Shown one piece after another: positions 191 to 50,692 of a stretch of DNA of 64,000 nucleotides. The position numbers and the translations under genes are program-made. The stretch is taken from contig OZ037765.1 in the NCBI GenBank assembly GCA_964035545.1, forward strand, positions 3,854,698 to 3,918,697. Reading direction: 5' to 3'. The notes under the pieces were generated by a model, which did no database searches, was not told the DNA's origin, and saw only the letters and a program-made list of their open reading frames with translations. This DNA is from Bugula neritina (taxonomy: Eukaryota; Animalia; Bryozoa). Within the stretch, counting starts at the first letter, position 1. Each line of letters begins with the position of its first letter.

Positions 191-3100
191 CAATGATAGG
201 CACGTGGAAGCTGGTAGAAGGCATGCTCTCAGCTATAAGTAGCATGAAGACGGAGAAGGCCAATAATATTGTGAGACCGAGACTTATCTTCTCCCCGGAG
301 TCTGGTTTCATCCAGAAGCTGAGCAGAGTGAGGATGGAGAGCATGATGCAAGGTATGATGATGTTGTATACGTAGTATAGAGTCCTGTGGAAGCAAAGAG
401 TATATAGTGTTGTATATAATATAATAGTCCTCTATGAGCAAAGAGTATATTATTATAGTATTATATATAATATATAGTTCTGTAGGAACAAAGAGTATAT
501 ATAGTATTATAAATGATAACGAGTTTTGTAAGAACAAAGAGTATATATGAATATACATAATATAGAGTATTACAACAGGAAAGATAATCTATTACCGCAC
601 ATTATTTAAAGTTTCCTAACAGTAATGTAGAAGCTGTATTATAGTATTATACATAGCATAAAGTCTTGTATTTTTTTCTATAATTAAAATTTTTAAAATA
701 ACAGTATAATTGTGAAAAATTGCAAAAAACTATCAGAATATATGGCAGAAGCTGTAAAAGTGTAGTATAAAACACAGTTGAGGCTGCTTAGCATTGTTTA
801 AATAGTAGAACAGCAAAACGCCTGTAAAACCATGAATATATGCTATTAAAACTAAAGAAAGCTAGTATTTGGGCATGTGGTGATATGAGTAGAAGAATAA
901 TATACTATAAAATTAAATGTTGAGTAGATGGTAGTGACTAAAGGAAGAAGAGAAATGTAAATATGAAATAGTGTAGTTGAAAAATATAAAGGGGTTCAAG
1001 AAATTGAGGAATAAGTATGACTATGTGACTATTTTAGGTAAAAGAAGGAGTGAGAAGCACACTATGAGCATATAATTAAAGGTGCTTTGAGTATACAGAT
1101 AAAAACTGGAAAATTAACAATAATATTACACATTGTGGAATGTTGTTATATCTGCATATACTGCATGCTAAATGCTAGTTACTAAATGTTACTACAATCA
1201 AATCATCAATTTAACACATTAGACACATACAGTAGCTTGTAGAAAATAAATCAAATGTCTACCCGTTAAGACTTGTCTTACTACTTCATGTTGTATGAAA
1301 TAAATAAACAGTAATATGTGAACACATTTACAGGATTCGGTGAAAGCTTCAATAAGTGTCAGTTACTGTAATTTAATATAGGTTGAGGAAATGGACTATT
1401 GATGCATTTTCAACATGAAAGTTATAATAAATACGATATGTGCATATGATATAAAACAAATAATTTGTGTAACCCAATATTTTACACTGAATTATAGAGA
1501 GTCAAAAAAAAATGCAATAATATTTTGCATTTTCAATTTCTAATTGGCAGTAATAAAATGATAGTAAAATATGTTTTGAATTTGATAATTCTTTAGAAAA
1601 ACTCTAGAAACTTAATATAATGTAACTTGCAAAATTTTAGCAAAAACACAAAGTTAAATTTCAACATGGTTTAACTTTTCTACAAACACTATCAAAAACA
1701 TACAAAAAACAAGATTTATAAAAATCAATAATTGTATTTGTATTGTTTATATTTAAACAGACAGCTAACTAAACAGGTGAATATTTGCTCCCGGCCAATT
1801 CATAGCTTTTATAACGCAAATTTACCAGCATATCTATATGCAGTGCCCATGCATTGATCATTTTAATTGAAGTACAACTATGCCATACACAGCTCTGAGG
1901 CTTTTTACAAAATACCTAAATCAGGGTTGTCCACTCATTTAGCAATAATCACGTTATTTAAGTTGTTGAAATGATTACCTCCTCTGTAGGTGTATTATGA
2001 AGGTGATGTCAATGTACGGTTCTGGACAGCATGGATACACCTCCACGTTCCTCACAACTTCAGTTCTCTTGAGTGACCACTCTCCATTCTTTTGGTAATT
2101 TGAAAGGTCAATGCCATCTTTTCGTTTCGTCAGGTTGACTTGAAAACCATCGTATGCCCACGAACCCAGCTTTAGTCTGCATTCCTATAAATAGTTTTTA
2201 TTAATTAATATACAACTCTTTGCTTTGCTTTACTATATTTCCTAAATTCTTAATAAATCAGTTCTACCCAATGACAAGCTAAGAGAAATAAAATGCTTAT
2301 ATGCTCAGTAAAATTAATATATGAAACAAGGGAAGATAATTCTGTCAGCACTAAAAATCATATAATACCCAATATACCGTGGAAACTGATAAGGTAGACA
2401 GTTACCTGATCATCATAAGGGAAGTATTTGATTTTAATTTCACAGTTTCCTCTGTATTTCACTATAGGAGGCCAGAAGACATTGCCATTATGTTCTACCA
2501 TTGTGAGGGCCTGCATGTACCCCTCCCTCAAATCCTCCACACTGTCAGATAAAAATGATAATATACCGTCAGTTTAGCTATCATACATTTGTGTATAATG
2601 ACCAGTTGCAAAATTATTTTAGGCTCGTTATGGAATTGATCAATACTAACAATTAGTATAATATTCTTTTTATAATTCTTTTATTTAATTTGTTGATGAG
2701 AATTTATTAACTGTACTATCTTTACGATTATATGAGCCTAACTTACATGCTGGTAATAAAAACCCAACATATTTAAACAGTAATTTAAAAACCAATAAAT
2801 ACTTCCAGCAATATACTACAAACCATGCATAATCCTATAATTATATAACCTAATTCAATTAGACTAGAGTAGATGTAAATCATTGTACTCGACTCCCAGG
2901 TGAGTTAGACAACCCTAAACTGTTTACTGCAAGTAAAATTGATGTTTTATATTTGTTTGCAGCAGATAAAATAAGTTCCACTCAGTTTCTTTATCTCTAA
3001 CACACTCAGTGTGAGTTTTGTAGTGTAAATTATTAATAATCATATCACATAACTGGTGGGAAATCTGGATAATTAAATAAACTCAGCTCGAAATTGTTTC

Positions 3101-48500: not shown

Positions 48501-50692
48501 TCAACACACCCATCTGCTTTTGTTGACTAACTAGTCACATGATTCTTTCGCACAGAGTAAAACTATAAAATTTTAGCTTAAGATTCAAAGTGATTATTTT
48601 TCAAAATATTTTTTCAATTCAGTAAAATAAACTAACTCACTCTTCTGTGGTAGGATTATAGTCTAAATATATTATGATCACAGTTAGCATCTAAGTTTAT
48701 AGAGAGAGAGAGGGTGTTACGGCCACCCTTACAGGACTACAGTTGTGTGAGTGACAGTATACTATTTGAGCAATATAGACAGTTTATTAACTGTATCTCA
48801 GTTTAAATAAAACAAGTCAAGTGAACTAAAATATTTTCTTTTGATTTTTTAACAGCTAGGAAGTTGTTACAATTCACTTACATAATATGAAGTAACATTA
48901 TTATATTATAATATAATGTACCATTATAACAGTATACAACAGTATTATTATAAAATAATTTGATTGTGTTTTCGTCAAATCTTACTAATAAAAATACCAT
49001 GCTTCTACCATGAAACTGGCACAGTAAATATTGTGCTTTAACAATCAGGTCTTATAAAATCAATTATATGTCTAGCAGCAGCAACAGCAGCAGTAACAGC
49101 AGCAGCGGCAAGTGTTGCAGAAATATATACAGTGCATAATCAAGATTTAGCTCCTAGGGTTTAAAAAATAGATGGAAGTATTTTGTCAACAGATTTACAT
49201 CAAAACATGCTAGTCTAATTCCTCAAGGACACTGTTAATCTTTGTGGTTATGAATTTGGTTACCTAACATGTAGCTAATGAAGTAAACAACTTAATTATG
49301 TAAAGGACTCACTCACTTCTAAGTTTTTAATAAGTAGAGAGCGGCTCAAGCATGTCTGCTGCAACAGCATTGATTTTTTATTATAAACCTATCAAGGCCG
49401 ACATCAACACTCAATCTATTTTACGTCTTGTAATTATTTAGCAAGTTAAGAGTTTTAACAGAATAAAAGTGAGTCATTCTACATGAATGCAATATGCAGA
49501 GCTTCACAGCTCATGAACAATTAGCACATTAAAGTAATATTTTACATTTTCTGCAGGCTTTTAATTAGCAATTTATTTTTAACTTGAAACTTAAATCAAG
49601 AGCACACAACTAACAAACGCAAACACCCACCTACCCGCTCACTCATCCAACTACCTGCTCACTAATCCACTTACCCATCCATCTGCCCACCCACCTACAC
49701 ACACATACACACGCACATGCACACACCTACCCATCCACAGACACACACCCACCCACCCACCTACCCATCCACACACACCCACCTACACACACATACACAC
49801 CCACCCACCCACCTACCCATCCACACACACCCACCTACACACACATACACACCCACCTACACACACATACACACGCACATTCACACACACACACACATCT
49901 ACACACAAACTCGCACACCACACACACACACACACACACACACACACACACACACACACACACACACGCACACACACGCACACACACGCGCACACACACG
50001 CGCACACACGCGCACATGAACATGCACATGAACATGCACACGCGCACACAGTGCTAATGGTGGTACTTATAGAGCAAGTAAGGACTTGGTCTTTGTTTAA
50101 AGAGAGAAGCAACACTTACCAGATCTGATATCTGAATAGGAGTTATCCCAAACAACACCTGAACAGTATGTGATGAATTGAGGACAGGTCGGGCTCTGTT
50201 GTCATAGCGATCTAGTAAATGTTTGATGAGATGAACCTCATCTGTGTACGTCACATTGACATCTAAAAGTATATAGCTTATGAAGTTTAATGCATATAAC
50301 AGAAGATGTCAAACGTAATGCCCTAAATATGGTACAAACTCTAACTTTGATTAATACAATAAATTTCGTTAAACCAATGAGACTATCCAGTTTCAACTTT
50401 TTAACAATTATTAGCAGAAGCCTTTCCCAGCCATTCTACTGCCTCATAATAAATTTGTAACAACAAATTCAATTTGCATTGTGAAGTACTCCTAAAGATC
50501 TTTACCCACTGTAGGCAGGTTTTACAATCAAAAAGCATTTAATAAAATTTGTAGGTAACTAATGCGGCTTCAACTATGAAAATAATTAAATAGTTTAATT
50601 TTTATATTCTTACCTGCGCTGCTCATTGCAAACATTTCAAAACCTAAAACTATTATAAAACATGTTAAAATGCTCAAATGTCTTCTCATCAT
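45537..50692 (-). CDS. nAChR alpha-type subunit F (alpha9/10-like)
   Basis: Exons 50692-50614 (signal), 50262-50120, 48423-48379, 47913-47804, 47214-46948 ([23 protein letters not shown]), 46558-46293 (loop [11 protein letters not shown]; M1-M2), 46114-45537. Confidence 0.95.
49620..50050. repeat. Compound (CA)n/(CACC)n microsatellite
   Basis: Direct reading; lies in intron 2 of gene F. Confidence 0.95.

What the first reader, a model, noticed from the sequence alone, without database searches (positions are those of the whole stretch)
191..50692. Six-gene nAChR cluster in which four members have rebuilt ligand sites: candidate ACh-independent sensory receptor family
Seen: six subunit genes with intact frames in the window lie in 50 kb. 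All keep the Cys-loop and the cation-type GEK ring, but only A (YPCCPEPY) and F (YDCCAEPY) keep loop-C vicinal cysteines. Loop C in the others reads YQRDFQY (B), YAGDNNTTRRY (C), [11 protein letters not shown] (D) and FNHTIRY (E). The K145/Y190/D200 gating triad is complete only in A; B, C and D lose the Lys and have His at the Asp position. Extracellular domains diverge strongly while M1-M2 is nearly invariant. Established: cephalopod chemotactile receptors are tandemly expanded nAChR derivatives with a remodelled ACh site, and molluscs show large nAChR expansions. Inference: this could be an independent radiation of nAChR-derived chemoreceptors or combinatorial modulatory subunits, still linked to their alpha-type progenitors.
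Basis: partly seen in the sequence, partly recalled or inferred. Interest (0 to 1): 0.85.

Follow-up and report, generated by a model that had tools for sequence, protein, structure and literature searches.

The report
Bryozoan tandem nicotinic-receptor gene cluster
Six (really seven) neighbouring acetylcholine-receptor-type ion-channel genes, four of which lost the classic cysteine pair of the ligand site yet are clearly kept by selection; this kind of local receptor expansion is already known in related animal groups, and nothing here shows a sensory or acetylcholine-independent role.

Summary
A seventh gene lies just upstream of the window.

- B-F form one clade with Cys-Cys-bearing F-like genes of other animals. 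The Cys-Cys pair was lost at least twice, once on the B/C/D stem and once in E. A belongs to another subfamily.
- B, C and E have orthologues in a related taxon, with dN/dS of about 0.1 and conserved new loop-C tips. They are functional genes, not decaying copies.
- B, C and D keep all five aromatic-cage residues, so their sites are re-tipped rather than rebuilt. Only E has a degenerate cage.
- Extracellular-domain dN/dS is 0.06-0.15. That is constraint, not chemoreceptor-like diversification.
- No RNA data exist for expression.

- N-x-T sequons at the loop-C tip of C, D and E.
- 9' Leu replaced by Val in the pore of C and D.
- Gene-conversion-like homogenisation of M1-M2 between B and F and between C and D.

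Tandem nAChR arrays whose members mostly lack Cys-Cys, and orphan receptors that keep the cage but lack Cys-Cys, are already described in lophotrochozoans. This is a new member of a known kind.

The parts
191..7434 (-). Gene A, alpha-type (Cys-Cys present), truncated by the window start. Exons: 6508-6621 (5' limit uncertain), 5243-5287, 4599-4708, 2406-2541, 1979-2184, 191-384. Candidate exon 1: 7383-7434.
   Evidence: Its Cys-loop is split by an intron, unlike B-F. M3 and pre-M4 exons lie upstream in L004. It groups with own-genome paralogue L012 and metagenome genes L030_1 and L060_1, not with B-F.
12753..17306 (-). Gene B, no Cys-Cys (loop C YQRDFQY). Exons: 16553-16674, 15399-15443, 15158-15267, 14538-14813, 13743-14005, 12753-13285. 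Candidate exon 1: 17237-17306.
   Evidence: Pfam LBD 2.8e-21 on exon 5. Orthologue L083 gives dN/dS 0.096 with an identical loop C.
22320..25913 (+). Gene C, no Cys-Cys (loop C YAGDNNTTRRY, two N-x-T sequons), M2 9' Val. Exons: 22873-22994, 23275-23319, 23699-23808, 24003-24269, 24691-24965, 25393-25913. Candidate exon 1: 22320-22404.
   Evidence: Orthologues L024 and L025: exons 93-96% identical against introns 78-85%; dN/dS 0.105.
29633..33060 (+). Gene D, sister of C (66% aa), loop [12 protein letters not shown] (one N-x-T sequon), M2 9' Val. Exons: 29882-30021, 30333-30377, 30706-30815, 30946-31212, 31706-31980, 32546-33060. Candidate exon 1: 29633-29726.
   Evidence: No orthologue was found, so constraint is inferred only from the C-D comparison.
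39933..44497 (+). Gene E, sister of F (57% aa), loop C FNHTIRY (N-H-T sequon). Loop-D Trp is lost (exon 3 reads [15 protein letters not shown]). Exons: 40910-41052, 42127-42171, 42647-42756, 42957-43223, 43470-43732, 43932-44497. Candidate exon 1: 39933-40005.
   Evidence: Orthologue L082 gives dN/dS 0.11, also lacks the loop-D Trp, and has Leu at the Y190 position.
45537..50692 (-). Gene F, alpha-type (YDCCAEPY), the conservative member of the B-F clade. Exons: 50120-50262, 48379-48423, 47804-47913, 46948-47214, 46293-46558, 45537-46114. Candidate exon 1: 50614-50692.
   Evidence: Shortest branch in the clade (0.12-0.17). F-like Cys-Cys genes with the same exon borders occur in metagenome contigs L026-L030.
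13744..13929 (-). M1-M2 segment of B. Nucleotide identity to the same segment of F (46294-46479) is 91%, far above that of the rest of the gene. This looks like a gene-conversion tract.
   Evidence: 48 of 60 same-residue codons are identical for B-F, against 34 of 51 for the true sisters E-F. TM dS 0.58 against a saturated ECD dS.

Best explanation
This is a lineage-specific tandem expansion of alpha7/ACR-16-like nicotinic receptor genes in an AT-rich lophotrochozoan, most likely a cheilostome bryozoan. An ancestral neighbouring gene trio, F-type, A-type and G-type, is still seen as adjacent pairs in other animals' contigs. B, C, D and E arose by local duplication on the F side.

The vicinal cysteines were lost twice, once on the B/C/D stem and once in E. 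Each loss came with a burst of extracellular change followed by strong purifying selection.

All four remain cation-selective Cys-loop channel subunits. B, C and D keep the full aromatic cage. They therefore most likely still use a quaternary-amine ligand such as ACh, choline or a close relative, with altered loop-C capping and gating, either alone or as partners of the Cys-Cys-bearing subunits. The altered gating is suggested by the lost K145/D200 pair, His at position 200, a glycan sequon on the loop-C tip, and 9' Val in C and D. E has a degenerate cage and is more likely an accessory subunit.

Shown here: gene structure, clade, losses, constraint. Inferred: ligand and assembly.
For: - Intact GT-AG models for all six genes, with Pfam LBD and TM domains.
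- One B-F clade that includes Cys-Cys-bearing F-like genes, with two Cys-Cys losses inside it.
- Orthologues of B, C and E give dN/dS 0.096, 0.105 and 0.11, and the new loop-C tips are conserved.
- B, C and D keep 5 of 5 aromatic-cage residues; E keeps 3 of 5.
- The GEK ring is present in all.
- C and D carry 9' Val when aligned to alpha7.
- Synteny: F-like is followed by A-like in L030, and A-like by G-like in L060.
- The nearest named relative of an own-genome paralogue is from Watersipora subatra, a bryozoan.
- The literature describes the same pattern in oysters and in Alpo4 (PMC6896357, PMC10338036).
Against: - There are no expression data and no functional data.
- Alpo4 has the same combination of kept cage and lost Cys-Cys, yet it does not respond to ACh (PMC10338036). 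A kept cage therefore does not prove ACh gating.
- No orthologue was found for D or F in the close relative.
- The B orthologue contig has a deletion of about 70 nt at the end of exon 5. This could be an assembly error or a damaged allele.
- Paralogues on contigs C5-C7 could not be fetched for the tree.
- Exon 1 and the 5' limit of A exon 2 are predictions only.
Confidence: 0.55

Rival explanations
1. B-E are receptors for ligands other than ACh. On this reading they are chemosensory or otherwise orphan receptors, an independent parallel to cephalopod chemotactile receptors or to Alpo4.
For: - Cys-Cys is lost, and the loop-C tip is replaced and then conserved.
- The K145/D200 pair is lost.
- ECD stem branches are 3-7 times longer than F's, consistent with a shift of function.
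- Alpo4 has the same signature and is not gated by ACh (PMC10338036).
- E lost the loop-D Trp and the Y190 aromatic residue.
Against: - B, C and D keep the whole aromatic cage. According to the papers read, CRs lack the ACh-binding signature (PMC10338036).
- ECD dN/dS is 0.06-0.15, against diversifying selection reported in CR pockets (PMC11526382).
- There are only four genes.
- No expression evidence exists.
Confidence: 0.25
2. B-E are widely conserved structural subunits, that is, one-to-one orthologues of ordinary non-alpha subunits shared across lophotrochozoans, and not a local radiation.
For: The B/C/D lineage branches off before the split between F/E and the F-like genes of other animals, so it may be older than this genus.
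Against: - An exhaustive HMMER search of 1.84 billion representatives with C exon 5 found only a fragment from the close relative above 50% identity.
- The nearest genome-wide paralogues of B and C are their own cluster neighbours.
- Metagenome contigs that hold F-, A- and G-like orthologues gave no B-, C-, D- or E-like gene.
- All outgroups carry Cys-Cys.
Confidence: 0.12
3. Some of B-E are pseudogenes or decaying duplicates.
For: E has changes at otherwise conserved positions: the loop-D Trp, Tyr to His after W149, and FWLPP to FCLPA. The B orthologue contig carries a deletion.
Against: - All six-exon frames are open and all splice sites are canonical.
- dN/dS is about 0.1 for B, C and E.
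- Exons are 93-96% identical to the orthologue against 78-85% for introns.
Confidence: 0.04

Closest known systems
alpha7 / ACR-16-like homomer-forming nAChR subunits
   Same: Best solved-structure matches of C exon 6 and F exon 5 are alpha7 and neuronal beta subunits. Also shared are the 45-nt and 110-nt exons, the RR-x-LYY M1 start, the GEK ring and the Cys-loop. A and F keep Cys-Cys and the aromatic cage.
   Different: B-E lack Cys-Cys. The whole F clade lacks the Asp equivalent to D200. C and D have Val at 9'. B-F have the whole Cys-loop through beta9 in a single exon.
Lophotrochozoan tandem nAChR expansions (Jiao et al. 2019, PMC6896357)
   Same: Tandem arrays of 2-12 genes arise by stepwise local duplication. 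Most members lack Cys-Cys (only 33 of 132 have it in C. gigas) and ligand-binding domains are diverse.
   Different: This genome has a modest family: about 95 LBD exon matches, roughly 35-40 genes. The genes here are intron-rich, not retroposed. The animal appears to be a bryozoan, a group not covered by that study.
Alpo4, orphan nAChR-like receptor of Alvinella pompejana (PMC10338036; PDB 8bx5)
   Same: Key aromatic residues are kept, the vicinal disulfide at the loop-C tip is lost, and it is a cation-type Cys-loop receptor.
   Different: It is not an orthologue. 8bx5 scores 46.8 bits with F exon 5, against 75-86 bits for alpha7 and beta3. B-D are recent derivatives of an alpha7-like gene, whereas Alpo4 is an isolated old lineage.
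Cephalopod chemotactile receptors (CRs)
   Same: They are nAChR-derived, tandemly expanded, cation channels, with an altered orthosteric site.
   Different: CRs are reported to lack the ACh-binding signature and to be under diversifying selection in the pocket (PMC10338036, PMC11526382). B, C and D keep the cage and are under purifying selection. No CR chain appeared among the best 60 solved-structure matches. Any likeness would be convergent.

Membership tests
Cation-selective Cys-loop receptor (nAChR family) | Neur_chan_LBD (PF02931) and Neur_chan_memb (PF02932) domains | tested here: met
   Exon 5 of B, C and E gives E-values of 2.8e-21, 3.3e-15 and 2.7e-23. C exon 6 gives 1e-19 and C exon 7 gives 6e-08 for the TM domain. 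The other genes are covered through paralogue alignment.
Cation-selective Cys-loop receptor (nAChR family) | Cys-loop of 13 residues between two Cys, with the FPFD core | tested here: met
   All six genes have it; in A it is split by an intron.
Cation-selective Cys-loop receptor (nAChR family) | Glu at -1' (GEK) and an acidic residue at 20' of M2 | tested here: met
   SGEK is present in all six. Position 20' is Glu in A, B, E and F and Asp in C and D.
alpha-type nAChR subunit | Vicinal Cys-Cys at the tip of loop C | tested here: not met
   Met for A and F only. B, C, D and E lack it.
alpha-type nAChR subunit | Aromatic cage: Y93, W149, Y190, Y198 and complementary W55 | tested here: met
   A, F, B, C and D have 5 of 5. 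E has 3 of 5: W55 is Ala, and Y190 is Phe here and Leu in the orthologue.
Cephalopod chemotactile receptors | Membership of the cephalopod CR clade | not tested
   No CR sequence could be brought in by reference. The sisters of B-E are Cys-Cys-bearing alpha7-like genes and the genome appears to be bryozoan, so descent from the CR clade is not expected.
Cephalopod chemotactile receptors | Diversifying selection in the binding pocket | tested here: not met
   Pairwise ECD dN/dS is 0.058 for B, 0.15 for C and 0.136 for E. Pairwise averages cannot exclude a few positively selected sites.
Cephalopod chemotactile receptors | Expression in sensory epithelium, and gating by hydrophobic ligands rather than ACh | not testable with these tools
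   No RNA run holds the locus, and there is no electrophysiology.
Alpo4-like orphan receptors | Aromatic cage kept with the Cys-Cys tip lost | tested here: met
   True of B, C and D. This is a resemblance only, because orthology to Alpo4 is not supported (8bx5 is a weak match).

The most novel reading that the evidence does not exclude
Bryozoans independently turned duplicates of an alpha7-like gene into receptors for non-cholinergic cues. On this reading a conserved, N-glycosylated loop-C tip replaces the Cys-Cys cap, and C and D gained a loosened (9' Val) gate. It would be a second origin of nAChR-derived chemoreceptors, caught at an early four-gene stage and still beside its alpha-type parent.
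Probability: 0.12. Interest if true: 0.7.

Novelty: new member of a known kind. Interest (0 to 1): 0.3.

Why it matters
The cluster is a compact natural experiment. One conservative alpha-type gene (F) sits beside four derivatives that lost the Cys-Cys cap in two independent events and were then frozen by selection. Orthologues exist for comparison.

This makes a small, well-defined set for de-orphanising Cys-Cys-less nAChR-like subunits. It also allows a direct test of what the vicinal disulfide, the K145/D200 pair and the 9' Leu contribute.

It does not change the current picture. Lophotrochozoan nAChR families are already known to expand in tandem and to diversify their ligand-binding domains.

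Tried and rejected
- **RNA evidence.** The look-up of sequencing runs found only one DNA run, probably the source sample.
- **Naming the organism.** The intronless F-box gene had only an unnamed JGI relative at 86% identity. A COX1 piece gave thousands of unnamed fragments. The best lead came indirectly, from a Watersipora protein.
- **Joined models.** Exons were searched one by one by reference. Joined models were used only inside local scripts for alignments, trees and dN/dS. No structure prediction or complex prediction of A-F was therefore made.
- **Missing paralogues.** Paralogues on contigs C5-C7 are absent from the trees.
- **Long branches.** The first ECD-only tree left the B-F clade unresolved because of two very long rows. 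Without those rows the clade returns at 98.6.
- **E exon 5.** The longer acceptor was rejected because the orthologue has a stop codon there.
- **Rfam.** A gathering-threshold scan of the window gave no hits.
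Full report
**What is there**

The window is AT-rich (30-36% GC). It is G000:C1:3854698-3918697 of a 216-Mb assembly.

An all-against-all comparison of stop-free segments shows six sets of paralogous exons. 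From these I built GT-AG models with uninterrupted frames.
- B-F share one structure: exon 2, a 45-nt exon, a 110-nt exon, a 267-276-nt exon holding the whole Cys-loop, a 263-275-nt exon running from loop C to the M2-M3 linker, and a last exon with M3 to M4.
- A differs. An intron splits its Cys-loop and another lies before M1. A runs off the window at 191, and its M3 and pre-M4 exons lie just upstream.

Pfam confirms the LBD and TM domains on single exons. A seventh, A-like gene lies 8 kb upstream of the window.

**Ligand-site and pore residues**

| Gene | W55 | Y93 | K145 | W149 | Y190 | Loop-C tip | Y198 | D200 | 9' |
|---|---|---|---|---|---|---|---|---|---|
| A | W | Y | K | W | Y | CC | Y | D | L |
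| F | W | Y | K | W | Y | CC | Y | L | L |
| E | A | Y | K | W | F | NHT | Y | M | L |
| B | W | Y | M | W | Y | QRDFQ | Y | H | L |
| C | W | Y | S | W | Y | AGDNNTTRR | Y | H | V |
| D | W | Y | S | W | Y | AIENNGTRR | Y | H | V |

However, B, C and D keep the complete aromatic cage, and only E is degenerate.
- C, D and E carry N-x-T sequons at the loop-C tip.
- C and D have Val at 8' and 9' and Lys at 15' of M2. The 9' position is alpha7 L247, where L247T dramatically reduces desensitisation (PMC3281115). That Val has a similar but milder effect is my recollection, not something checked here.
- The Asp at position 200 is missing in the whole F lineage, including F-like genes of other animals.

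**Relatives**

An exhaustive HMMER search with C exon 5 found one 69-aa JGI fragment at 91% identity and nothing else above 50%. Named hits came from many phyla. Within the genome, the nearest matches of B and C are their own cluster neighbours.

Contigs of JGI sample 3300003318 hold orthologues of three genes.
- C (L024, L025): aligned over 2.2 kb including introns. Exons are 93-96% identical and introns 78-85%.
- E (L082) and B (L083).

| Gene | dN/dS overall | dN/dS in the ECD |
|---|---|---|
| C | 0.105 | 0.15 |
| E | 0.11 | 0.136 |
| B | 0.096 | 0.058 |

 The new loop-C tips are conserved: C is identical or has D-to-E, B is identical, and E keeps NHT. E's Y190 position is Leu in the relative, which also lacks the loop-D Trp. 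One caveat applies. L083 has a deletion of about 70 nt at the end of exon 5, which is either an assembly error or a damaged allele.

A metagenome scan with the exon-6 alignment gave 56 loci. They include F-like genes that carry Cys-Cys and have the same exon borders (L026-L030). One contig has an F-like gene directly followed by an A-like gene (L030). Another has an A-like gene followed by a G-like gene (L060). This suggests an ancestral F-A-G arrangement into which B-E were inserted. That order of events is an inference.

**Trees** (joined models used only in local scripts)

With ECD plus TM1-3 and 102 rows, B-F plus the F-like metagenome genes and the C orthologues form a clade with 100 SH-aLRT. 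A falls in another clade.

With the ECD alone, and two very long rows left out, the clade has 98.6 support. Inside it are [(B,(D,C))] at 93 and [(L027,L030_2),(F,E)] at 90. All outgroups carry Cys-Cys, so the pair was lost twice within the clade.

Stem branches of the Cys-Cys-less lineages measure 0.5-0.87, with a further 0.4 shared by B, C and D. F's branch measures 0.17. Terminal branches since the split from the related taxon are 0.1 or less. The pattern is a burst of change followed by constraint.

**Concerted evolution**

In the 62 M1-M2 codons, nucleotide identity differs sharply between pairs.

| Pair | Nucleotide identity | Identical codons among same-residue codons |
|---|---|---|
| B-F | 91% | 48 of 60 |
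| C-D | 93% | 51 of 58 |
| E-F (true sisters) | 81% | 34 of 51 |
| B-C | 70% | 21 of 44 |

 TM dS is 0.5-0.6 where ECD dS is saturated. Part of the 'invariant pore, divergent ECD' contrast is therefore probably gene conversion.

**Organism**

The mitochondrial COX1 uses TGA for Trp, ATA for Met and AGR for Ser, which is the invertebrate code. My own support is that the nearest named protein to own-genome paralogues on C4 is from Watersipora subatra, a bryozoan. I could not name the species.

**Comparison with what is known**

- Tandem nAChR arrays whose members mostly lack Cys-Cys are described in bivalves (PMC6896357).
- Alpo4 keeps the aromatic residues, lacks the Cys-Cys tip and remains an orphan not gated by ACh (PMC10338036).
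- Octopus CRs show diversifying selection in the pocket (PMC11526382).
- No paper in the held library treats bryozoan nAChR genes.

The cluster is thus a new member of a known kind.

**Verdict**

The 'ACh-independent sensory' part is untested, and two results lean against it: the kept cage in B, C and D, and purifying selection on the ECD. Interest is modest (0.3).

Noticed in passing
L004:56-3121 (G000:C1:3844753-3847818), minus strand: A seventh nAChR gene (G) lies 8 kb upstream of the window. It is A-like (51-56% identity) and carries Cys-Cys. Its orthologue follows an A-like gene in metagenome contig L060.
   Followed up: partly
window 13744-13929 vs 46294-46479; 24770-24955 vs 31785-31970: The M1-M2 coding segments of B and F (91% nt) and of C and D (93% nt) are far more alike at synonymous sites than the rest of the genes. 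This suggests gene conversion within the cluster.
   Followed up: partly
window 35117-36412, minus strand: An intronless 431-aa F-box/LRR gene lies between D and E. Its only close relative is an unnamed JGI metagenome protein at 86% identity; everything else is at most 24% identical.
   Followed up: partly
window 55569-58563, minus strand: A multi-exon Kelch-repeat gene lies downstream of F (Kelch_1 E-values 2.7e-19 and 3.5e-13 on single exons).
   Followed up: no
window 21161-21218: Another note of this scan calls this a complete type I hammerhead ribozyme. An Rfam gathering-threshold scan of the whole window gave no match to any family.
   Followed up: partly
window 6622-7140, minus strand: The open frame upstream of A's exon 2 (173 codons) has no Pfam domain. 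Whether it is coding, as another note suggests (an extra N-terminal segment), depends on an acceptor that cannot be placed without RNA.
   Followed up: partly
window 8684-9198: A tandem repeat with a unit of about 98 bp (196-bp higher order, copies 89-100% alike) lies in the A-B intergenic region.
   Followed up: no
window 33728-34225 and 60792-61264: These are two copies of a dispersed element with internal inverted symmetry. Translated matches are 77-96% identical on both strands, so it is probably a transposon remnant.
   Followed up: no
L083:1160-1180: The B orthologue contig of the related taxon lacks about 70 nt covering the last 15 codons of exon 5 and the donor site. This leaves an in-frame TAA. 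It is either an assembly artefact or a damaged allele.
   Followed up: partly
G000 contigs C321, C6, C17, C214, C73: There are several COX1 copies. C321 is the mitochondrial contig (9 TGA codons). C6 has a same-length nuclear copy. C17 has a COX1 without TGA codons, which is bacterial-type. C214 and C73 carry different TGA-containing COX1 genes. The assembly therefore holds cobiont sequence.
   Followed up: no
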